Assembly (NCBI RefSeq): GCF_963853765.1
Contig: NC_088860.1
Span: 30,194,001-30,258,000, forward strand
Origin: Magallana gigas
Taxonomy: Eukaryota
Length of the DNA stretch: 64,000 nucleotides
Direction of reading: 5' to 3'
A program made the position numbers and the translations under genes. Below, in pieces: positions 2,018 through 52,247 of the stretch. The notes under the pieces are model-generated. The model saw only the letters and a program-made list of their open reading frames with translations. It did not search any database and was not told the origin of the DNA. Within the stretch, counting starts at the first letter, position 1. Each line of letters begins with the position of its first letter.

Positions 2018-2413
2018 TTATGCACTGTCTACTGTCATGAATCTGTTGTGTGGCAGGGATTGGACGGTGTTGGCTTCTTCGATTTCTGTATCTGGGTTTG
2101 GTGCACAGTCTCCCTCTTCTTCTTCTAGGATGGAATAGCGGTTTGATAAATTAATTGATGAATAGAAGCTACAGGGTGGTGATGATATAGGCGATGATGG
2201 AAGCCTCGAACGTTTTCGTTGTTTGTATGGTGAAGGAGAGTCTCTGGATCTTTTCTTCTGAGCAGGTGTTTTGGTCGATGGCGAAGACTGCGGCGTCACT
2301 GTAGTGGATGGTAATGAGTGAGGAGACAATGGTGGTGACGTGGGCACATGTCTTGTAGTCTTTGGTAGTTTAGACTCCTTAGTCTTTTGTCGAGGAGGCG
2401 ATGGTGAAACATC
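2018..2413 (-). pseudogene. C-terminal Ser/Pro-rich half of the OTU/vertnin-like ORF interrupted by the 2414-8627 insertion
   Basis: Encodes DVSPSPPRQKTKESK...LSNRYSILEEE...DSA*. It continues in frame from ...FDQRVFE (ending at 8628) once 2414-8627 is removed. Its first ~40 aa are a diverged copy of the repeat at 8650-8760. Confidence 0.7.
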
Positions 2414-3219
2414 CATGCCAAGAAATGCCGTCCGGTTTAGAATAAGCCTAGCTAACGGTCTTCAATTATACACTTAATTAAGGTCAGCCGCATTTGCTTG
2501 AAAACCCGCAATAAGGGATCGAGCCGAACTAAAGTTTCAGAGATTTGGGTCAGCGGCTGTTTACGACAGTCTTTAGAGTGCCAATGTTTATAGCTTAGAG
2601 ATACGTGTTGGGATAAGAATAAAAAGGACACAAGCTAAGATTTGGAAGACAGACACTTTGTAATTAAAAAAAATAATTATGTGATTTTCCTCTTTTACTT
2701 ATTCATCGTCTCCATATTGTTTACACTTGGAAACACAATCTCTAAGAATTATTTCTCTCTGAAATACAGAATGTTATGTTTTGTTTGGGGGGTTTTTTTT
2801 TTATAAACCTAGCATTTTTTAAAAAATTAAGCCGATATACGTACATGTAATATTGATGTACGTCATGTAAAGTGTTAAATACACGGGTATCTTTTTTGTT
2901 AAGAGAGTTTTAATTAAGGTATGGCTAACTAACCTTGTATTAAAGGAACTGAAGAAATTTGAAATATTCAATCGGATGCAAATGTATGACCACCGCAGGG
3001 TTTATTATTATGCGATGTTTCATATAATAAATGTTACATGAAAGTTTATAGCGTTAATTTTTAAGGTATGCTGTAGAATGTATATAACACTTTTTTATTG
3101 TTAGTTTTGAATATATTTCGTTAAACAGACACTGCACCGATCAATTATCTGTATTGGTGGGAAATCCGAAATGCAAAAATTCTGGTAAACCGGTAAAAAC
3201 TAAAACAAAAGTTGTAAAA

Positions 3220-6200
3220 ATGTCGAATTTTTTTCGACCATGGGTGGAGACACGGCCGGCTGTACCTGTGCGTAGACGTGTAATGTTGCCGTTGAATAAC
3301 AACATGCAGGTACGTAACTACTTGTTTATGGATGATTCATAGTGTAGGTGATCAATACATTAAAGTTACCCACTCAGTAGAATGATAACTATAGGCTATA
3401 TTTTAGCAAAAAATTAAGCCGAAATACTTATATAGTGAATATGCAGAATTTATATAAAAGTCAATGTATGTGTATTTGACAAATTTATGTTGATATTGTA
3501 TGTCATGTCAGTTATTGAAGCTTTATAATTTTTTTAATTTTTATTTCACATGCATATTTTATTGCAATAGGACCACGATGATATGGAAAATAAGAAAACT
3601 CCACGCAAAGTAAAAGGATTTTTTGAGCTGAAACATTCTCAAAGAGGAGAAAGGAAAAGAAAATACCAAAGCGCTTTTCAAGAAGCTTCAAGCTGTGTTC
3701 ACAGTGATATTTCCTCCATCAAAGTCCAGTTCAATTTTGATAATGGACATGTTTTATCCTTTTTTCCCCGCAAAGTGTCCCCTGATGAAAATGCTAGTTT
3801 GGAAGATGAAGGTGTTAAGAAATCTCAAGATCTTGCTGTAATTCAACAGGTTATTGCAGTTAAGGACAAGTTCAGAATTTCTGACGAAGCTTTACATGAA
3901 CTTCATATGATTGGTTCAATAATACCAAGCAAGTCAGCCATCAATACAGAAAAATACCGTCTCAACACAACTCTTGAAATAATGAGCCATCCAACAGTAA
4001 GTACATGTACCGTGCTTTTTTATGTGTTGACCACTGACTTATTTAGCACGTTTTATTATCTTATCATTTGAATATCAAATTTAGAAACCGATCGATCATA
4101 GCACAAGCCAATTTACTTTTATTTATTTTTTTAACAAAGGCAGACTGCAGTACTAGAAAGCTAGAGCACATTCTAGAGTTTGTACTTCAACACAAAAAAT
4201 ACCAGAAGTATATTGAGAATGACACTGTTACCCTGCGTTTTTCCTGTGATGGTGCCAAAATTGCCAAAAATATCTCCTCAGTAAGAGGGGTGTTCAAGAT
4301 TTTGGCACCAAGACAGTCATTGCCAGATAAGCTTGAAGATTTGAGCATGTGTCCAGAAGATGAGTTTACTCTTTTCTTTTACATTGGTGAGAAACTTTGT
4401 ATTTATTGAAATTTCCTGTCATGTATTTTGGAATTATTATTTCGATTATCACATGTTTATTTCAATTAAGGAGATGAAAATCGATGCAGTTTAGAGGAAT
4501 ATGCCTCTGGGACATTAAGAGACATGGAAAATGTTCAATTGAATGGAATTGTAATCAATGGAAGAAAAATCTCTGTAAAGTGGTAAAGTTATCTCATCAT
4601 CTACGGTTATCGTTTTTTTTATTCTATACCCTATTTGTTATTATAATATCATTTCAAATTCTAAACTGGTACAATTATATATTTTGTAGGATAATGACTT
4701 GTGATTGGAAGGCACTTGCCTTACTGAGGGGAATTAATGGCGCTCAATGCGAATTTTTCTGCATGTGGTGCCACTGCTCCAAAAAGCAGATATGCGATTT
4801 CAGTAGTAAGTAACTGTTGTAAATTGATAAAATGATACAAACATTGTAATAAAAACAATAGCAATTGCTGGACAACTAATGTGATTTTATAATGTTTTTT
4901 GTAGTCCCATCTTGGTTGATACAGAGATCTAAAGAAGAACAACAAACTGTTCTAAATTCTGAAAAGAAAACGTTCGGGTACAAAGATACAGATCTCTGCC
5001 CTTTCATTTCATACCATGACATGCCCATTGATGATCTTCACATGCGCATAAGGATTTCTCTAAAGCTCTTCAATCAGGTACATTGTCTCTTATTAATATA
5101 CACGAATGTATACTTTTAACGACTCTGCTAACTATCTGCATACACAAGATCTCCTTGCTTGATTTTGACAATTTTAAATTCAGCTTGTGACCTGGGCAAT
5201 AGACCAGAAATCTGAAGACAATTTGAAAAGAGAACTGAAACGCGTAGGTGTCAGTTTCAGAATGTGGGAGGAAAGGGGGGATGACAAATTGAACACCAAA
5301 GTGAGGAAATGGTCTCAACCAACAGGTATATATATGCCTTTCTTTAAAAAAAAATACTATAAGTGTTTGCAGTTCTTGTAGCAAATCTTCTGAAAAATAT
5401 TTGCCATTTCATTTGTAGGTGATGATTTACGTAAAATTATAAGAGACGTTCAAATCCATCATATTCTGGACAATAAAAAGGACAGGCACTACGTATCAAT
5501 AGAAAGCCTTTCAGTACAGCAGTTGAGGGACGAATTAACTAACAGACAGCTTTCCAAAAAAGGAAAAAAACCCGAACTTGTAGCCCGATTAAAAGATGCT
5601 GTCGGAAATAACACTAAGGTATATTTACAGAAACTCAAATTCACTGAATAACATTTATATTTCCTGAATGTTTACATAGTAATATAAAACTTTTCATTCA
5701 TGTTGTTTTAGATGAGGAGGAATGTAGGCTCTCGTCTTCAGGTATCGTACGACTTTTCAGAAGATGAAGAACAGGACCTGGACGTCGCAGCCCTGCAAGA
5801 TCTGTGGTCAGGTTTCCATACGCTCATGGAAAGTCTCCGGGCATTACCTGGAACAGATAATTACAAAGATATGGAAACTTTTGCAAAAGAAGCAAAAGAA
5901 TGGGCCACTGAATTTCGAAAGCAAACCTTCGATGAAGATGTTATCCCATACATTCATGGTGTGTAAAAATGTTAAAGATTCTATAAAGGAATCATACAGC
6001 CTATCCCTACTTCTTTCAGGGTATAAAATTCATTTTGTTTAAATTACATTTTCAGCTATGGTTTATCATGTACCACAGTTTCTGCAGACATACCACTACA
6101 TACATGATATCGGGGTTGCCCAAGTTGAGCGTAAAAATTTTGACCATCGTCAAGCGTACTTTGGAAGCACCAACAGAAATGGGTCCAAATGGAAAAAACA

Positions 6201-6425
6201 TGTCTCAAAGCAGGTACATACCATTATTCAGATAGTCAATCTGCTTGATTTGTTTCACAAATTTTTCTGCCTTCTGCAATGAATAATTAATCAAAGATAA
6301 ATATGCATTTCAGTCCTTGTCATACTTGTGATCTTTAATTACAGATTCTTGAGAGGGAAAATAGAATGCTTTGGTCCAGTCTACATGGAACTGTACGTGA
6401 AAAAAGAAAATATGTAAAGTCTTAA
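3220..6425 (+). CDS. RAG1-like (Transib/Chapaev/RAG1 clade) DDE transposase, 663 aa, 11 exons, with inserted SAP domain
   Basis: Exons 3220-3309, 3571-3996, 4140-4386, 4471-4582, 4690-4805, 4905-5077, 5184-5325, 5419-5618, 5712-5958, 6056-6213, 6345-6425. All introns are GT-AG and phase-compatible; 1992 nt with no internal stop. Motifs: FSCDG (D, 4248), TCDWK (D, 4703), CMWC at D+19/+22, IDDLH, PYIHAMVYH (H-x4-H), AQVE (E, 6127) at H+20. These spacings equal mouse RAG1 D600/D708/C727/C730/H937/H942/E962. RKVKGFFELKHSQRGERKRK resembles the nonamer-binding-type helix. The first ATG choice (3220) is inferred. Confidence 0.88.
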
Positions 6426-8473
6426 ATACCGTCGTTTAGCTACAGTCCCAGTAACCATGTTTCTACGAGACCTTGTAAAAGTTACATGAATCCATGATGG
6501 ACCACGAACATACAGTATTACAGGGTCACATAGCTGTGGTCGGTTCTCCTCGGCATCTTTCCATGTGCATCTAAACAAAGATTTTTATAATGAAGCAGAT
6601 CTTTATTATTATCAAGCAATATTTATTAAGAAGCCCACAAAGATGAACAAATATTGTATTTCTATGTATAGAAATGTTGTTTTTTTATATTAGAATAATA
6701 TTGTATCACACTTTTGATATTATTGTTATTGTTTTTACTATTACAATTAAGTAAATAATGTATAAAATTGATGTTCCTTATTGCAATAATATTGTATCAC
6801 ACATTTGTTATTATTATTGTTTTTTTTTAAATTAAGTAAATAAACATTCACATTGGATTAAATTTATGTAATCATACCTTTTACAATTATTGTGTTGGTA
6901 TTGCTTTCTCTCCTTATATCCCCACCAGACATGAATAAATTCTTTGAAGGAGACAAATGTTTCTGTTGATGTTTTGTAACATCTATTTGACCAGTTCTCT
7001 CCAATGGCAGAAGTCATTTCTTCACCTGTAAAAATAAACATAAATTACTTAACAATTATTTTTAGTAACCGAACACTTGCATTCCAAGTATGTCTTTCAA
7101 GATACCTCCTGTCTCCACTTGCATGGGACCAAAACTTTAAATAGACTTGTCATATGCTCAAGAAAACAATTATCATAATATTGCTTCAGATAGTTCATTA
7201 CCTGTGAGGTAGAAATCCACATTTCCATTGTCTGTTGGCAGAGTATCCATCAAAGACCTGAAGTATTTATTAAAACTTGCACAAGAAAAAGGCACTTTCA
7301 CTGTTGTCCTCGACTGGATGCCTAATGCACCATCAGGTGTACGGCGTGCATCGCCTAAACTGTCAAAGATGGCCTGTCGCAGTGCCATAATGTCATCAGG
7401 GTTGTTCCTGCAGTCTATTTTGTTGGAATCTAAATTCCTGCGGTGAAGATGACAAGAGAGGGGGTTTCCTTTATTTCTTTCAATGAATTGCTGCAATTCC
7501 TGGTTTCCATCTAAACTGACCCAGGTTGATGGTCCCTCCCAGTCCTTCCATTTTACTAGCACTTCTTGCTCCCTCCTCTCTAAAATGTCTTCAATCTCCC
7601 ATAGTTTCTGAGATAAATTGTTGAGAATAGTTTAAAACATGAATGATTATTCTATTATTGTTTTTCTTAATTAGTTTGGATAATTCATAATTTTTCCCGA
7701 TGTAGGATATTCGTGATCTAAGAGTGGCGCTAGATCCGCCTACACACTTTGACTGAGATTTGTATACCTGCTTCAAATAAATATAAATAATAGTCTAATA
7801 TAGTTCTAAAATACACATAAAGGTAGATCAAAAGGGAACCCTAACGATATTTAACGATCGCAAACCATAATATATACATAGATATGTCTATACATATTAT
7901 AAACATCATCAGGGACTTGTACTATGATTATTACAACTATTCTTAGAAATGAATATGTTACAAAAGTTTAAATGTAAGTATATACGATATTTGTATAATA
8001 ATATTTATTGTTATACTTTCATGTTAAATACTGAAATCTGATTGGTTAAGACGCAGTTAATAATATTTTCTATTACCCTCAGCGTTAGCAACGCACTTAG
8101 CAACGGGTAACATTAAAAAATGTTACATGCGCGAAAATTATGCGCGTACGGTTCGCTGTAGAATTCACGTTATTCCTATATAAAAGCAGTAAAATTTTCT
8201 TAAAAATTAAGACATTCAGTATAACAAAATAAATAGTGCCTGTTTGGGAGGATAACAGTTGAAATTGACACCCCTCGAAAACCATTGTCAACCTCCGCTT
8301 CGCGTCGGTTGACAATGGTTTTCTCGGGGTGTCAATTTCAACTGTTACCCTCCCAAACAGGCACTATTTATATAGTGTACCTCTTTCGACTTGTTCTCCT
8401 TTAAACTTCTAAAATTTAAATTTTCCTCCCAATCTCCGAATCTTACAGGGGCTCTTCTCTTTCTCTGTGCCAT
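6381..8473 (-). CDS. Chromodomain-containing partner protein, 256 aa, 4 exons, convergent with the transposase
   Basis: Exons (minus) 8473-8447 (MAQRKRRAP, donor GTAAGA), 7607-7202, 7025-6878, 6570-6381. GT-AG introns with phases 0/1/2 consistent; 771 nt open. N-terminus KLWEIEDILERREQEVLVKWKDWEGPSTWV matches the chromo fold pattern. The remaining ~200 aa are unrecognised and include HNNCKRCTW...LC. Confidence 0.8.
8002..8372 (+). mobile_element. Non-autonomous element ending in a ~143-bp palindrome (family A), inserted in intron 1 of the chromodomain gene
   Basis: 5' TTATACTTTCATGTTAAATACTGAAATCTGATTGG; 3' hairpin ATAAATAGTGCCTGTTTGGGAG...CTCCCAAACAGGCACTATTTAT (8229-8371). Relatives at 37628-37856 and 38458-38630. 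Superfamily (Crypton-like or Helitron-like) not determined. Confidence 0.8.
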
Positions 8474-8627
8474 TTCTTAGATAAGAATGCAGCTGAAGAA
8501 AGCACACAGGGAGCTCGATTTCACTTAATCGGTTCATCGCCGTGGTAACGCTGACCGCCTGGGATGTGGTCACTAATTTATAACGGGGTTGTGAAAGCGG
8601 AATTTTGGAGCAGAATTTCTTGGCATG

Positions 8628-9295
8628 TTCAAACACACGTTGATCAAAAGTAGGCGATGGCAACGAATATGGAGACGATGGTGGTGATGTACGCACATGC
8701 CTCGTTGTTGTTGTTACCTTGGATTGTTTTGTCTTTTTTCGAGGAGGCGAAGGTGATCTTGCTGATTTGGGTGTTGATTTGTTCCCGCGGCTAATTTTGA
8801 AGCTGAAGTTGAACTCCCTCCTGTCATTGTTTGGCACAGACGATGTTGATTTTGATGGCACGACGGGAACAAAATGGTTGGGTGTCCACTGCTTGTTTGG
8901 TTTAGGTGGCATGGTACTGGTCCACATGATTTTAATGGCAGTGTCACTGATGGGATCCTCGGGTGACGTTTTCAAGTTCAACTTTTGGAAGGCCAGGTCT
9001 TGAGTACCATTAACGCATGGGTAAAGTATTTCCATAGGCACGTTGATTATGTTGGATAGTGCAAGTATGGTCCAAACACATGAATATTGTCTTGGTCGGG
9101 CACACTCCTTGTTTAAAGCGGTGTCATATGTTGGCGAGAGACTAGCCCGATCCTTGTGTTGTTGGATGTTTTCTTTGTTGAGGAACATCTCCAAGCAAGA
9201 TTTAAAACGTAGCTCTGTGGCCAAGGACTCGTCTCCAACCAACAGCGTTGAAACGGAATTAAAAAGGCAATCAGACTTGGTAGATTTTGTGATGG
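8628..9295 (-). pseudogene. OTU-type cysteine protease (vertnin-like) domain ORF, 5'-truncated and split by the transposon
   Basis: Part of track ORF 8409..9395: SDCLFNSVSTLLVGDESLATELR ... WTILALSNII ... IMWTS ... WTPNHFVPVV. This is the Cys-box/His-box pattern of OTU/vertnin-like domains, but the usual GDGN before the Cys is degenerate. Confidence 0.7.
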
Positions 9296-9299
9296 TTTT

Positions 9300-9782
9300 T
9301 TGGGTGTACCTGGTGAATGTCGTTTTTATGGTGTTGGAGGAATGAGAGCCGATAGGGTGGATCAGAGGGTTTTTTGTGCATTGCTGGAATTTCAACCAGA
9401 AACAGTGTTTGTGTGTATAGGTGGAAACGACATTAGTATGAATTCCAGTCCACGACAGACTTTTGAGAATGTTAACGAAATAGTGAACATTCTTACTAAC
9501 AATGGTACCAAAAACGTGTATATCGGCGAAATAATGACAAGGGGACAGTTTTCCAGATCACCAGGCCTGACGAAAGATATGTTCGACAAGAAGAGGAAAC
9601 TGATCAACAAAAACTTGAAAAAGAAATACGGACGATTCTTTGTGACATTTAGTGATATTCATTTTCCGGACCACTACGATAAGGATAAGGTGCACCTAAA
9701 CACCGACAGAACTGTAAGGGATTCGGTGCCCGGAATGAAGAAATTCCAGTGTAGACTTATACGTGTCTTGTGTAGACAATGA
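9300..9782 (+). pseudogene. SGNH/GDSL hydrolase fragment lacking the N-terminal GDS block
   Basis: GVGGMRA (block II), FVCIGGNDI (block III) and DKDKVHLN (block V) are present. No block I serine motif is visible upstream and the ORF begins at a non-ATG codon. Confidence 0.7.
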
Positions 9783-11720
9783 ACTAGCATGCATTAAATG
9801 AAAACCTAACATGTGCTGTGTAGAAATTGAACTAACATGCATTAAATAAAAACCTAACATTATTTGGAAGTTTTTAGTTTTTTTCCCGCTTTATCGCAAT
9901 CACTGTGTTAAATACTAAATCTGTTTCTTTATTTCCAAATGTGATGTCTTAAAGTTATTCTTGTTTCCAACTTATCTGTAGACGTCCAATAATTTAGTTA
10001 ACATCCAGTTTTTCCTGTCTCTGTCCATTATTTTTTTTTAAAAACGGGCGGTTTCTATCCATTATCTTTATAAATGGACACCTGTTATTTTTTTTTAATT
10101 TAAGAAGTATTTTATCTTGCATAACAGCCAAAAAAGAACTGGCAATTGAAAGGGTTATACATAAAAAAGATATTTAAAAATTATTAGGACGAAATGATTT
10201 TAATTTCCAGGGCATATATATGAGCATATCACACCTGATTTACACGAACATTAACATAAAGTTAATTTCAATTTATAGTACAGACCCTGTGAAAAAGTAA
10301 AATGAGTGATCAACAGAAATTCGCAAGAGTTAGAGAGAGAGGACAACTTGATTTTCTAGAAGCAGTGGACTAATCAAACTAAACCGGAAGGTGAAAACTC
10401 ATTTAATTCACATACATGTACTTAGTGTAAAAGTTACCACCCAAAATAGGCATTGAAACAAGCCCGACCCCCGAGCAAACAAACTTATCCCCCTACCCCC
10501 ACCCCTGAACATATTGATATGGATATACGCATGCACTCGCCATATTATCATGATTTACAGAAAAATAATTAAGATCAAAGAAACTAACGTTGTTTCAAAT
10601 CGTGCTCTTGTTTTATTACATGATTTACATCAACATTCAAAGCGTGCTCCCGCCAGCTTTTTTTGTTGTTGTTTTTTGCTATTTTTTCTTATTTACAAAT
10701 AAAATATATTTTTTTTTTTTACAAATAAAATATTTCAAGATTTTTCGGACATATTATTTCTGCAATCGGCTGGATCCACCCCCGCTTCTTTAATTCGTCG
10801 TGAAATTCCATGTACTTTTTCCATGAACAAAACTCAGTCACGTGATTGTCTTTGTCATTCGAACAGCACAGAGAACCACACTGTGGCACACAAAAGAAGC
10901 CTATGTCGTAGAGAAAACATCGACGGAGGGAAGAAGATAAGTTTGATAAGTTTGAAACTAAGGTAGGAATTGATTTTGGGTTGTCTTTTACTTGTGATGC
11001 AGAACGCACGAATGGGTGTATGTAATTTTAAGTAATAATCCCCTTGATAAGTTATGTGATAATTAATATCCTTTTTAACGAAATTTGTATCCGAAATTGT
11101 TTAACCGGTATTGTAAATAACGGGGTGATATGGTACACCTAGGCAATCGACCTTGCTAGACGATGACGAGTCTGCACGAGAGATAAATCTGAAATGCATA
11201 CTAAGGGTCGGGGTTTGGTGAGATGTGGTTTGTAAAGGCGTAAGCAATATTTGGCAGTTATTTGTGAAAAACAACATTTTGGGGGATTCTTTTATCATAT
11301 TTTGTCACATCTTATTTGAGAAAAAATGAAAAATACAAGTAATTTAACCGTGTTCCCCAGCACTGCAAAATTGATCTTTGCCGCTCTATGATCGAGCATG
11401 TGCGAATGACAGCAAACACTGTCGGGTCCAGTACAATCTCTTCATTTAGCTGTATGTAGTATAAGTTAGCTGTAGCTCTTAGATAATCCAAAGTATGTCG
11501 ATGATCATTAAGAAGACTAGATGGTCGATGCTAGATAATTTTTCAGCATCTAGACAAAATGACACTTTAGTGCAATGATAATTATCAACTTTAAACTGTT
11601 CTGTAAACAATGCATGTAAAGATTACTCATCAATTTGCGTCTCTTTAAGAGACCCTGCACTTAAAATTTTAAAAAGTTTGGGGGCAATTGATTTACGACC
11701 ACACAGTTGTACTTCTTGGA

Positions 11721-12088
11721 CAGGTTGGGACCACTCTCCCAAATGGGATACAATAGCCCGTTTGGGATATAATTTTAAGGGCAAAAAAATATTTTTTTTT
11801 ATTTTAAAATTTTTGAAATAATTCCGCATTAATGTGAATAAAATGCAACAACTTTTGGTTAAGAAGTTTTTCTATATTTCTATAGTTTGTAAGATTGATC
11901 CCCAAGAAGTTTTGGATAAACTGAGGGATCAATCTCAGTAATAGTACAGCTACAGAAAAAGTTGTTTACCAAAAGTTGTTGTATTTCATCTATTCTAATG
12001 CGGATTAATATCAAAAATTTCAAAATCAAATTTTTTTATTTTTTGCACTTAAAATTTATATCCCATTTGGGAGAGTGGTCCCAACCTG
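11721..12088. mobile_element. MITE with ~170-bp TIRs and 5-bp TSD (TTGGA)
   Basis: Ends CAGGTTGGGACCACTCTCCCAAATGGGATA and TATCCCATTTGGGAGAGTGGTCCCAACCTG; TTGGA at 11716-11720 and 12089-12093. Confidence 0.9.
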
Positions 12089-12286
12089 TTGGATGAAATA
12101 TAAAGAAGGTCAGCTATAGTTAGCAAGATATAACTGATTGGTACATGTAAAAATTCAGCACAATGTAAAGAAATCATACTTATCCACGCATCAGTGCACA
12201 CAAGGTGGTGGACAGTTAACCAAACATGGGAATATAATGTTGTTTTTTTTATTCTTTCAGTACTTATATAAGGACCACTATCTTCC

Positions 12287-13268
12287 ATGATGTCAGCCAC
12301 CCACCACACAAATACTACCACGGTAGTCATGGCCGCTCCCCAACCCACGGTAGTGATCCAGCAACCCAAGAGGGAAAGGTCAGATTGATTGATAGAAATT
12401 TTGTCTTGTTATACTAAAAATGAGTAAAAAGCTTGACACCTGTTATAATAATAAATATACAGCACGTATTTCATACATTTTAGTGCAATATCTTTTGTAA
12501 TATGCAATTCTAATAGTTTGATATTATAAAGCAATGTCAAAAGCAAATACCCATGCTATGTGAACTTCTGATTGAAAAAAAAACGTAATTCAATTAATCA
12601 TTTATCCATCTGACAATCGTATGCAGTAACAAATTATGGAAGCTACATATAACATAATTCATATGTTCTATTTGTTTTGTAGGTTTGCGGACAAAATTTT
12701 GCTGAACCTCATAATCTCGTTTTTCTTCCCGTTCTGGCTCTTTGTGTGGTGCTGCATGGTAAGTAGTACTGAAATATGTCACAGTAGTATACACTTGGAC
12801 GTATATAATGAAGACACTAAGGGGAGTTTATAAGGTTACGACAGCTGAACAGTTTCAGTTGCAAAAAATTAATTTAGAATTAGAATTTTTTTTTATAGTA
12901 TCAATGAAAAATATTTTTATGTAATATAAAGTATGTAGAAAAAAAAACCCATCTACATCTCGATTCTTTTAAAAATTGTGATTTTCATGTTAATTTTAAA
13001 ACGTTAAATACACAAGTTTGATTTTATTTACAATTTCTGTATTGACTGTCATTAATTTCACTTTTGAAATATCATCATAAAATGTAATTTTCATGTTAGT
13101 AAATATTTTCAGTTTTACAAGAAAAATCCATGTTATGTTTCCATGGTATTTCATGGTATACCTGCTATACACCTCGTGGTTGTATATGATTATGTTAAAT
13201 TTTAATAGACCATGTTATAAAGTGTGCTAATGTACTTCTATTCTTTGCAGTGTATTTGTGAAAAGTGA
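12287..13268 (+). CDS. Small Cys-rich membrane protein, CYSTM-like, copy 1 (short form, 61 aa)
   Basis: Exons 12287-12378, 12683-12758, 13251-13268 (GT-AG, phases 2/0): MMSATHHTNTTTVVMAAPQPTVVIQQPKRERFADKILLNLIISFFFPFWLFVWCCMCICEK*. The family name is inferred from the architecture. Confidence 0.8.
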
Positions 13269-52111: not shown

Positions 52112-52247
52112 NNNNNNNNNNNNNNNNNNNNNNNNNNNNNNNNNNNNNNNNNNNNNNNNNNNNNNNNNNNNNNNNNNNNNNNNNNNNNNNNNNNNNNNNN
52201 NNNNNNNNNNNNNNNNNNNNNNNNNNNNNNNNNNNNNNNNNNNNNNN
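52112..52247. other. Assembly gap (136 N)
   Basis: Run of n characters. Confidence 1.

What the first reader, a model, noticed from the sequence alone, without database searches (positions are those of the whole stretch)
7520..7607. Partner chromodomain has a complete aromatic cage, fused to an unrecognised ~200-aa domain
Seen: LWEIED..VKWKDWEGPSTWV places Trp at all three cage positions (HP1 pattern Y..W..Y/F). Known: chromodomains on chromovirus integrases steer integration by chromatin state. Inference: this protein could tether the transposase to methylated histones. The rest of the protein, with H-x2-C-x2-C...C, may be a Zn-binding or transposase-docking domain of unknown family.
Basis: partly seen in the sequence, partly recalled or inferred. 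Interest (0 to 1): 0.78.

Follow-up and report, generated by a model that had tools for sequence, protein, structure and literature searches.

The report
Transposon-encoded chromodomain partner protein
An oyster DNA transposon carries, tail-to-tail with its cutting enzyme, an intact, spliced and expressed gene for a small protein made of a real chromodomain (a reader of methylated histone tails) plus a conserved zinc-type domain of unrecognised fold; the same gene pair occurs from sea anemones to amphioxus, but what the protein does is untested.

Summary
Minus-strand bases 7607-7520 encode KLWEIEDILERREQEVLVKWKDWEGPSTW, with Trp at all three HP1-type cage positions.

- **Chromodomain:** Pfam misses it in the window protein (12 bits, cutoff 25). 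The family profile hits CDYL chromodomains in the PDB (E=3e-4), and AlphaFold models of the window exon and of a full-length relative match almost only chromodomains.
- **Gene:** RNA contigs define a 4-exon, 277-aa intact gene (8473..6384, minus strand). It lies inside a 6.2-kb element (2414-8627, 13-bp TIRs) and is convergent with a multi-exon DDE transposase that carries a SAP domain.
- **Conservation:** The same convergent pair is present in oyster, mussel, periwinkle, amphioxus and Nematostella, where four 99.7-100% identical copies sit at different sites. Ka/Ks between two oyster copies is 0.18. The cage and an H-x2-C-x2-C-x12-C motif are conserved across the family.
- **C-terminal domain:** The ~190-aa C-terminal part has no Pfam, PDB-sequence or clear fold match, but it was never folded alone.
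- **Function:** Histone tethering is plausible but untested.
- **RAG1/Transib kinship:** Only motif spacing supports it. The TIRs start CAT, not CAC, and there is no 5-bp TSD.

This scan noted the same cassette twice elsewhere in this genome (s1-395810, s1-382363).

The parts
2414..2426 (+). Left terminal inverted repeat of the element (CATGCCAAGAAAT)
   Evidence: Perfect 13-bp inverted repeat with 8615-8627. It is the outer limit of the two-gene unit.
8615..8627 (-). Right terminal inverted repeat. Element end at 8627.
   Evidence: Similarity to an independent 82%-identical copy (L001) starts exactly at 8627 and the flanks are unrelated. The parts of RNA contigs that match the window also stop at 8627 (table 8).
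8381..8473 (-). Chromodomain gene, exon 1 (ATG at 8473; MAQRKRRAPVRFGDWEE..., 31 codons)
   Evidence: The joint 8381|7607 (GT..AG on the minus strand) is seen in 3 RNA runs. The exon is conserved in L001 and L004 and in annotated relatives P0014, P0024 and P0038.
7202..7607 (-). Exon 2: chromodomain, linker and first half of the C-terminal domain
   Evidence: RNA joints 7607|8381 and 7023|7200 (cut +2); translation; model m30a6ffdc7aa0.
7473..7607 (-). Chromodomain proper (three beta-strands and a helix). Cage Trp codons at 7601-7599, 7550-7548 and 7541-7539.
   Evidence: DSSP of the window model: E5-12, E15-20, E28-31, H36-44, block pLDDT 91-96. Foldseek hits are chromodomains. Cage columns.
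6878..7025 (-). Exon 3 (GEEMTSAIGENW...WGYKERKQYQHNNCK), carrying the His (6894-6892) and first Cys (6885-6883) of the H/C motif
   Evidence: RNA joints 7023|7200 and 6570|6878. Relatives P0010-P0012 are continuous across the exon 2/3 junction.
6384..6570 (-). Exon 4 (R-CTWKDAEENRPQLCDP...RRNMVTGTVAKRR, stop at 6386-6384). Second and third Cys at 6569-6567 and 6530-6528. Alternative donor at 6430.
   Evidence: RNA contigs run 6360/6374-6570 unspliced. The exon is conserved in L001, L002, L006 and L011. P0055 shows a spliced variant from 6430 to about 6273 that ends ...AKRRRQKNL.
3583..6282 (+). Convergent partner gene: multi-exon DDE-type transposase. Motifs: RFSCDGAK 4236-4259; CDWK-x15-C-x2-C-H-C 4700-4777; SAP domain about 5499-5600; VIPYIH 5940-5957; MVYHVP...QVERKN 6058-6138.
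   Evidence: All nine homologous exon segments are open. Pfam SAP E=1.3e-11. Intron 5617-5709 is seen in RNA contigs. Homologous exons lie downstream of the chromo gene on the opposite strand in L001, L006, L007, L008/9, L011 and L012. Motif coordinates.
8008..8376 (.). Nested high-copy palindromic repeat inside intron 1 (not part of the gene)
   Evidence: 75-nt arms at 8224-8298 and 8302-8376, 91% complementary. Absent from copy L001. Summed RNA-contig depth is in the thousands, with many loose ends at 7996-8008 and 8374-8378. No Rfam family.

Best explanation
The finding is the reader domain of a 277-aa protein encoded by a cut-and-paste DNA transposon (2414-8627). The protein has four parts: a basic N-terminal motif (KRKR..P.RFGDW); an HP1/CDY-class chromodomain with a Trp-Trp-Trp cage; a short helical linker; and a compact alpha/beta domain that probably holds one zinc ion through H-x2-C-x2-C-x12-C. 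It is transcribed convergently with the element's DDE transposase, and the 3' ends overlap. Shown here: the gene structure, its expression, the chromo fold, conservation of the cage and the H/C motif, purifying selection, and linkage to the transposase from Cnidaria to Chordata. Inferred: it acts as an accessory subunit of the transposase. The chromodomain would bind a methylated histone tail; by its nearest relatives an ARKS-type site, H3K9me3 or H3K27me3, is most likely. The C-terminal zinc domain would dock onto the transposase or the element ends. Excision or integration would then be steered to, or licensed by, a chromatin state. In function this parallels the RAG2 PHD finger in RAG1-RAG2 and the chromodomains fused to chromoviral and Maverick integrases. 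The confidence given (0.5) is for the inferred mechanism; for the identity part alone (a transposon-encoded, expressed, conserved chromodomain protein) I would put it at about 0.9.
For: - **Gene model:** Four exons, all GT-AG, 834-nt intact CDS. Each intron is seen as a joint in RNA contigs from 3 studies.
- **Profile evidence:** The family profile against the PDB gives CDYL E=3e-4, and all real hits lie in profile positions 4-59. Relatives reach Pfam Chromo at 21.9-24.8 bits. The profile also finds multi-chromodomain proteins.
- **Cage conservation:** Position 1 is aromatic in 31/36 sequences, position 2 is Trp in 51/53, position 3 is aromatic in 42/49.
- **H/C motif:** H in 33/37, C in 34/37, last C in 17/18.
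- **Selection:** Ka/Ks is 0.18 over 260 codons against copy L001.
- **Linkage:** The gene is convergent with the same transposase in L001, L006 (Mytilus), L007 (Littorina), L008-10, L011 (Branchiostoma) and L012/13/15/16 (Nematostella).
- **Mobility:** The four Nematostella copies are 99.7-100% identical over 5028 bp with unrelated flanks. The oyster element has a sharp boundary at 8627.
Against: - No binding, interaction or targeting data exist.
- The window protein alone fails Pfam's Chromo threshold.
- Some family members lack one cage aromatic, for example P0025 YWK, P0027 FWQ and P0032 YWG, so methyl-lysine reading may not be universal.
- All five Nematostella sequences examined (four genomic copies and one run contig) carry an in-frame TGA at the conserved Trp of WGY, upstream of the zinc motif, yet the four near-identical genomic copies lie at different sites. 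This suggests the C-terminal domain is dispensable in cis, is supplied in trans, or is read through.
- The few insertion sites seen show no obvious chromatin preference. The oyster copy sits in another repeat, while one Nematostella copy sits in a gene intron.
- The C-terminal fold was only searched as part of the whole model, so 'unknown fold' is provisional.
Confidence: 0.5

Rival explanations
1. Regulator or counter-silencing factor. The protein does not guide integration. Instead it binds H3K9me3/H3K27me3 on the element's own chromatin, or competes with host HP1/Polycomb readers, to keep the element transcribed. Alternatively it acts as a self-limiting repressor of transposition.
For: The chromo fold and the conserved cage fit this reading equally well. 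The two genes are transcribed convergently with overlapping 3' ends (P0055). That layout invites small-RNA silencing, which a reader protein could modulate.
Against: Nothing distinguishes this from the tethering model. The conserved zinc-type C-terminal domain and the strict genetic linkage to the transposase from Cnidaria to Chordata fit a dedicated partner better than a general chromatin competitor.
Confidence: 0.2
2. Architectural or DNA-end subunit. The C-terminal H/C/C/C domain binds the element's terminal repeats or assembles the transpososome. The chromodomain serves as a protein- or nucleic-acid-binding module, as cpSRP43 and some MSL3/MOF chromodomains do, and not as a histone reader.
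For: The conserved residues of the C-terminal domain are mainly basic or aromatic (R, K, W; RRN motif) and include no conserved acidic pair. cpSRP43 chromodomains are among the best profile and fold matches.
Against: A complete, conserved three-aromatic cage is the hallmark of methyl-lysine or methyl-arginine readers. No DNA-binding fold was recognised.
Confidence: 0.15
3. Fixed host gene pair rather than a working transposon part. At this locus the pair is a domesticated or decaying remnant, and the chromodomain gene now serves the host, or nothing.
For: In amphioxus and Littorina the pair is annotated as ordinary single genes between host genes.
Against: At this locus the pair is bounded by 13-bp TIRs. 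A second oyster copy has unrelated flanks starting exactly at the TIR. RNA contigs identical over exon 1 continue into flanks unlike the window. Oyster runs yield many diverged copies (P0001-P0009, 79-98% identity).
Confidence: 0.1
4. Chance chromo-like motif in a captured gene fragment with no function.
For: Pfam Chromo is below threshold for the window protein.
Against: Profile, fold, cage conservation, Ka/Ks of 0.18, splicing and cross-phylum synteny all contradict this.
Confidence: 0.02

Closest known systems
HP1 / Polycomb / CDY-class chromodomains (best matches: CDYL, CBX7, CDYL2, HP1, LHP1, Rhino, Oxpecker)
   Same: Three-stranded sheet plus C-terminal helix. Aromatic residues at the three cage positions. 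The KW-x2-[WYF] and TW motifs.
   Different: All three cage residues are Trp. The loop between strands 1 and 2 is short, which costs Pfam score. The domain is followed by a unique ~190-aa zinc-type domain and is encoded by a transposon.
RAG2 / RAG2L in RAG1-RAG2 and ProtoRAG (RAGL) transposons
   Same: A second gene, convergent with a DDE transposase, that carries a histone-mark reader. The transposase has a Cys pair after the second Asp and a His pair before the Glu, as in the RAG1 ZnC2/ZnH2 modules.
   Different: TIRs start CAT, not CAC. There is no 5-bp TSD. Transposase-to-RAG1 similarity is at noise level in the sequence searches run here.
Chromodomains of chromoviral (Ty3/gypsy) and Maverick/Polinton integrases
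   Same: A mobile-element-borne chromodomain, thought to direct integration by chromatin state.
   Different: Those are C-terminal fusions to a retroviral-type integrase. Here the chromodomain is on a separate polypeptide next to a cut-and-paste transposase.
KolobokP elements of bivalves (Kojima and Bao 2022, PMC9587614)
   Same: Bivalve-rich DNA transposons found across several animal phyla, with a transposase and a small Cys/His-rich protein on the opposite strand.
   Different: The KolobokP partner is a His-Cys-box His-Me finger nuclease with eight conserved H/C. KolobokP elements have long terminal direct repeats and RR..YY termini. None of these features is seen here.

Membership tests
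Chromodomain (Pfam PF00385; HP1/Pc/CDY class) | Three-stranded antiparallel sheet packed against a C-terminal helix | tested here: met
Chromodomain (Pfam PF00385; HP1/Pc/CDY class) | Sequence-profile match above the curated threshold | tested here: inconclusive
   Window protein: 12.2 bits against a cutoff of 25.1. Relatives: 21.9-24.8 bits. The family profile hits CDYL chromodomains in the PDB at E=3e-4 and 4.7e-4, and almost nothing but chromodomains.
Chromodomain (Pfam PF00385; HP1/Pc/CDY class) | Three aromatic cage residues at the HP1 Y24/W45/Y48 positions | tested here: met
   W/W/W in the window by alignment to LHP1 and CDYL. Across the family these positions are aromatic in 31/36, 51/53 and 42/49 sequences.
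Chromodomain (Pfam PF00385; HP1/Pc/CDY class) | Binding of a methylated lysine peptide | not testable with these tools
   Needs peptide arrays, ITC or a co-crystal structure.
RAGL / ProtoRAG / Transib transposons | RAG1/Transib-type transposase core (DDE with ZnC2 and ZnH2 modules) | tested here: inconclusive
   Motif spacing in the window is D-19-C-x2-C and H-x4-H-20-E. This equals the published RAG1 numbering D708/C727/C730 and H937/H942/E962, which I recalled from knowledge. However, five PDB searches with exons or exon profiles found no RAG1 or Transib chain. The only Pfam RAG1 hit is one exon at E=0.085-0.12, no better than unrelated hits.
RAGL / ProtoRAG / Transib transposons | Partner gene is RAG2-like (six-bladed kelch propeller, with or without a PHD finger) | tested here: not met
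   The partner is a chromodomain plus an alpha/beta zinc-type domain. There are no Kelch or PHD hits in Pfam or in the fold searches.
RAGL / ProtoRAG / Transib transposons | TIRs begin 5'-CAC (RSS heptamer-like) | tested here: not met
   Oyster termini are CATGCCAAGAAAT. Nematostella termini are CATATCAAAC. The CAC requirement is stated in PMC7204232.
RAGL / ProtoRAG / Transib transposons | 5-bp target site duplication | tested here: not met
   Four near-identical Nematostella copies and the oyster copy show no 5-bp direct repeat at the flanks. A short palindromic target hidden inside the CAT...ATG termini cannot be excluded.
RAGL / ProtoRAG / Transib transposons | Two convergent genes between the TIRs | tested here: met
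   Window and loci L001, L006, L007, L008-10, L011, L012-16.
KolobokP | Long terminal direct repeats, RR..YY termini, and a His-Cys-box His-Me finger partner | tested here: not met
   The termini are CA..TG with a 13-bp TIR only. The partner has four, not eight, conserved H/C residues and carries a chromodomain. Family features are taken from PMC9587614.

The most novel reading that the evidence does not exclude
An ancient (cnidarian to chordate) superfamily of cut-and-paste transposons in which a very divergent RAG1/Transib-like transposase works as a two-subunit enzyme with a stand-alone methyl-histone-reading chromodomain protein. This would be a second, independent invention of the 'transposase plus histone-reader partner' design that gave rise to RAG1-RAG2.
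Probability: 0.3. Interest if true: 0.85.

Novelty: new variant of a known kind. Interest (0 to 1): 0.64.

Why it matters
Mobile elements are known to reach chosen chromatin through reader domains fused to their integrases. RAG1-RAG2 is the textbook case of a transposase that depends on a separate histone-reading partner. A widespread, still mobile transposon family with a separate chromodomain partner would be a natural second example. It would allow tests of how a reader subunit shapes cut-and-paste transposition, and of whether such partnerships arise repeatedly. It would also offer a compact chromatin-guided integration system, and its ~190-aa zinc-type domain has no recognised fold. I found no paper describing it. 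Public annotations say only 'uncharacterized' or 'Chromo domain-containing protein'.

Tried and rejected
1. **Pfam on the single exon.** Chromo at E=0.18 and PB1 at E=0.08 are both sub-threshold. PB1 was dropped because nothing else supports it.
2. **An 'exon D' with a conserved ILFSLSR tail (6421-6338).** RNA contigs run through this region unspliced, and full-length relatives end just after RRN.V. I do not count it as coding. Its conservation in L002 is unexplained.
3. **Intron 2 arising by tandem duplication.** GNELSEAI at the intron start resembles GEEMTSAI at the start of exon 3. The nucleotide similarity is no better than in 519 of 2000 shuffles, so I rejected the idea.
4. **Identifying the transposase.** I ran five PDB searches with single exons or exon profiles, one ESM Atlas feature search and three Pfam scans. 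The only results were SAP and one noise-level RAG1 hit.
6. **A 5-bp or 8-bp TSD at the oyster element.** None was found. The 107-nt direct repeats outside the element (2301-2407 and 8650-8756, 76% identical) belong to two copies of a Pro/Ser-rich ORF of another repeat and are not a TSD.
7. **KolobokP membership.** Rejected on termini, LTDRs and partner type.
8. **Local resemblance to PG_binding_1 repeats.** The ALRQAIFDSLG..R.TPDG..G segment resembles these repeats (P0102, E=5.8e-5 summed over 4 repeats). In the model the second half of the segment is a strand, not a helix, and Pfam gives no PF01471 hit for family members. I treat it as a motif coincidence.

Full report
**What is at the coordinates**

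The window is AT-rich (about 33% G+C) animal DNA. Sequencing runs that hold this stretch are labelled as an oyster or oyster metagenome. On the minus strand, 7607-7520 reads KLWEIEDILERREQEVLVKWKDWEGPSTW.

**Gene model**

I laid Logan contigs of four RNA runs, from three studies, on 3300-8700. They show minus-strand GT..AG joints at 8381|7607, 7200|7023 (canonical with the cut shifted by 2, so exon 2 ends at 7202 and exon 3 starts at 7025) and 6878|6570.

Splicing 8473..8381, 7607..7202, 7025..6878 and 6570..6384 gives an 834-nt open frame encoding 277 aa.

Relatives P0010-P0012 are continuous across the exon 2/3 junction. They all stop at H-x2-C-x-R, the position of the conserved next donor site. 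Exon 1 (MAQRKRRAPVRFGDWEE) and exon 4 are conserved in other loci.

A protein in the database, P0055, is 100% identical to residues 170-263. Beyond that it shows an alternative splice from 6430 to about 6273. This variant ends ...AKRRRQKNL and runs antisense into the transposase gene. Its two W residues at window TGA codons suggest that the source used a non-standard code (inference).

**Is it a chromodomain?**

- **Pfam and single-sequence search.** Pfam on the window exon is sub-threshold (Chromo 12.2 bits against 25.1). phmmer against the PDB gives only LHP1 at E=0.12, but with the three Trp on the cage columns.
- **Exhaustive profile search.** It found 106 cluster representatives with E<=1e-3, of which 63 are below 1e-10. 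The weak tail includes genuine multi-chromodomain proteins.
- **Relatives in Pfam.** Full-length relatives reach Chromo at 21.9-24.8 bits.
- **Family profile against the PDB.** A 42-sequence profile hits CDYL chromodomains at E=3e-4 and 4.7e-4, then cpSRP43, Chp1, LHP1, CBX and HP1. All of these lie within profile positions 4-59.
- **Model of the window's exon 2.** AlphaFold2 gives pLDDT 87.5 with strands 5-12, 15-20 and 28-31 and helix 36-44. All of the top 50 Foldseek PDB rows are chromodomains, with prob 0.9-1.0 and TM by target about 0.5-0.6.
- **Cage conservation.** In a 56-sequence alignment, position 1 is aromatic in 31 of 36 sequences that cover it. Position 2 is Trp in 51 of 53, and position 3 is aromatic in 42 of 49.

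The domain is a chromodomain with a complete, selected cage. Binding itself is untested.

**The rest of the protein**

After the chromodomain come two helices and then an alpha/beta domain, with pLDDT above 90 in the P0040 model. The motif H-x2-C-x2-C-x12-C is conserved wherever sequence is available: H in 33/37, first C in 34/37, last C in 17/18. Zinc binding is an inference from this pattern.

The search tool warns that one domain can fill the hit list.

**Context: a two-gene transposon**

- **Element boundaries.** A perfect 13-bp inverted repeat (CATGCCAAGAAAT) lies at 2414-2426 and 8615-8627. An independent copy, L001, is 82% identical at protein level. It aligns with the window from exactly 8627 inward and is unrelated outside. 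RNA contigs identical over exon 1 also leave the window sequence at 8627.
- **The partner gene.** Between the TIRs, on the plus strand, lies a multi-exon gene whose open segments carry RFSCDGAK, CDWK-x15-C-x2-C-H-C, a SAP domain (E=1.3e-11), VIPYIH and MVYHVP...QVERKN.
- **Conserved pairing.** The same exons lie downstream of, and convergent with, the chromodomain gene in six other settings:
  - a second oyster copy
  - Mytilus coruscus
  - Littorina saxatilis
  - an unidentified ENA organism
  - Branchiostoma belcheri (Mytilus through Branchiostoma)
  - Nematostella vectensis
- **Recent mobility in Nematostella.** Four copies are 99.7-100% identical over 5028 bp. They sit on four chromosomes with unrelated flanks and are bounded by CATATCAAAC...GTTTGATATG.
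- **Selection.** Between the two oyster copies the chromodomain gene has Ks 0.56 and Ka 0.099, so Ka/Ks is 0.18 over 260 codons.

The gene is a conserved, selected component of a mobile element.

**What kind of transposase?**

The spacing D-19-C-x2-C and H-x4-H-20-E matches the published RAG1 residue numbers D708/C727/C730 and H937/H942/E962. I recalled those numbers from knowledge; I did not compute them. PMC7204232 describes the ZnC2/ZnH2 modules.

Against this stand several results. Two single exons and three exon profiles found no RAG1, RAG1L or Transib chain in the PDB. The only Pfam RAG1 hit is one Littorina exon at E=0.085-0.12, no better than unrelated hits in the same scans. The termini start CAT rather than the invariant CAC, and no copy has a 5-bp TSD.

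No direct repeat of any length is visible outside the CAT...ATG termini. A short palindromic target hidden within them cannot be excluded.

I therefore treat 'RAG1-like' as an open lead and 'ProtoRAG-like' as an architectural analogy. KolobokP, another bivalve-rich family with two convergent genes, does not fit either.

**Mechanism**

The best-supported reading is an accessory subunit whose chromodomain binds a methylated histone tail and whose zinc-type domain contacts the transposase or the element ends. By its nearest relatives, the mark is most likely at an ARKS-type site (H3K9me3 or H3K27me3). This would couple transposition to chromatin state.

Only the anatomy, expression, conservation and linkage are shown. 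The binding and the coupling are inferred.

One point complicates the picture. All five Nematostella sequences examined (four genomic copies and one run contig) carry TGA in place of the conserved Trp codon of WGY, which cuts off the zinc motif. Even so, that element has near-identical copies at four different sites.

**Novelty**

Four literature searches found no description of this element. Public names for family members are 'uncharacterized' or 'Chromo domain-containing protein'.

The scan's own notes report the same cassette on two other pieces of this genome (s1-395810, s1-382363). They agree with my reading. One of them claims a RAG1 fold for the transposase, which I could not test.

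- The N run at 52112-52247 was left untouched.
- Read laying was given 5401 letters.

Noticed in passing
window 8008-8376 (arms 8224-8298 / 8302-8376): A ~370-bp palindromic, MITE-like repeat is nested in intron 1 of the chromodomain gene. It is absent from copy L001. RNA contigs pile up on it at summed depths of thousands, with many different flanks. No Rfam family matches.
   Followed up: partly
window 8409-9395 (-), 9300-9782 (+), 2018-2416 (-): The element sits among pieces of another repeat that encodes an OTU-like protease ORF (Pfam OTU E=3e-4, sub-threshold) and a GDSL/SGNH hydrolase ORF (E=1.7e-11). Pro/Ser-rich tails of that ORF flank the element on both sides as 76%-identical direct repeats (2301-2407 and 8650-8756).
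   Followed up: partly
window 6273-6430 and P0055: A spliced transcript variant of the chromodomain gene continues antisense through the 3' exons of the transposase gene. The two convergent genes therefore give overlapping complementary RNA.
   Followed up: partly
L012, L013, L015, L016 (Nematostella vectensis), element 7887-12914 in each: Four 5028-bp copies, 99.7-100% identical, lie on four chromosomes with termini CATATCAAAC...GTTTGATATG and no visible target site duplication. A DDE-type element without a TSD, or with a hidden palindromic target, would be unusual.
   Followed up: partly
L012-L016, about 8646-8648: All five Nematostella sequences examined have TGA where the family has the conserved Trp codon of WGY. 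The frame continues open behind it through the H/C/C/C motif. This could be a shared nonsense mutation in a still-spreading element, or a read-through codon.
   Followed up: partly
window 6338-6421 (-); L001 1762-1845; L002 about 1600-1645: A short frame ending ...ILFSLSR(I/V)... just 3' of the chromodomain gene is conserved between 50%-identical relatives, although RNA contigs do not splice to it. It may be a minor exon or a cis element between the two genes.
   Followed up: no
L009 18366-18790 (-): In the unidentified ENA organism, ORFs with BrkDBD/HTH_28 (psq-type) hits lie just beyond the 5' part of the transposase. They could be an N-terminal DNA-binding exon of the transposase or a neighbouring pogo-like element.
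   Followed up: no
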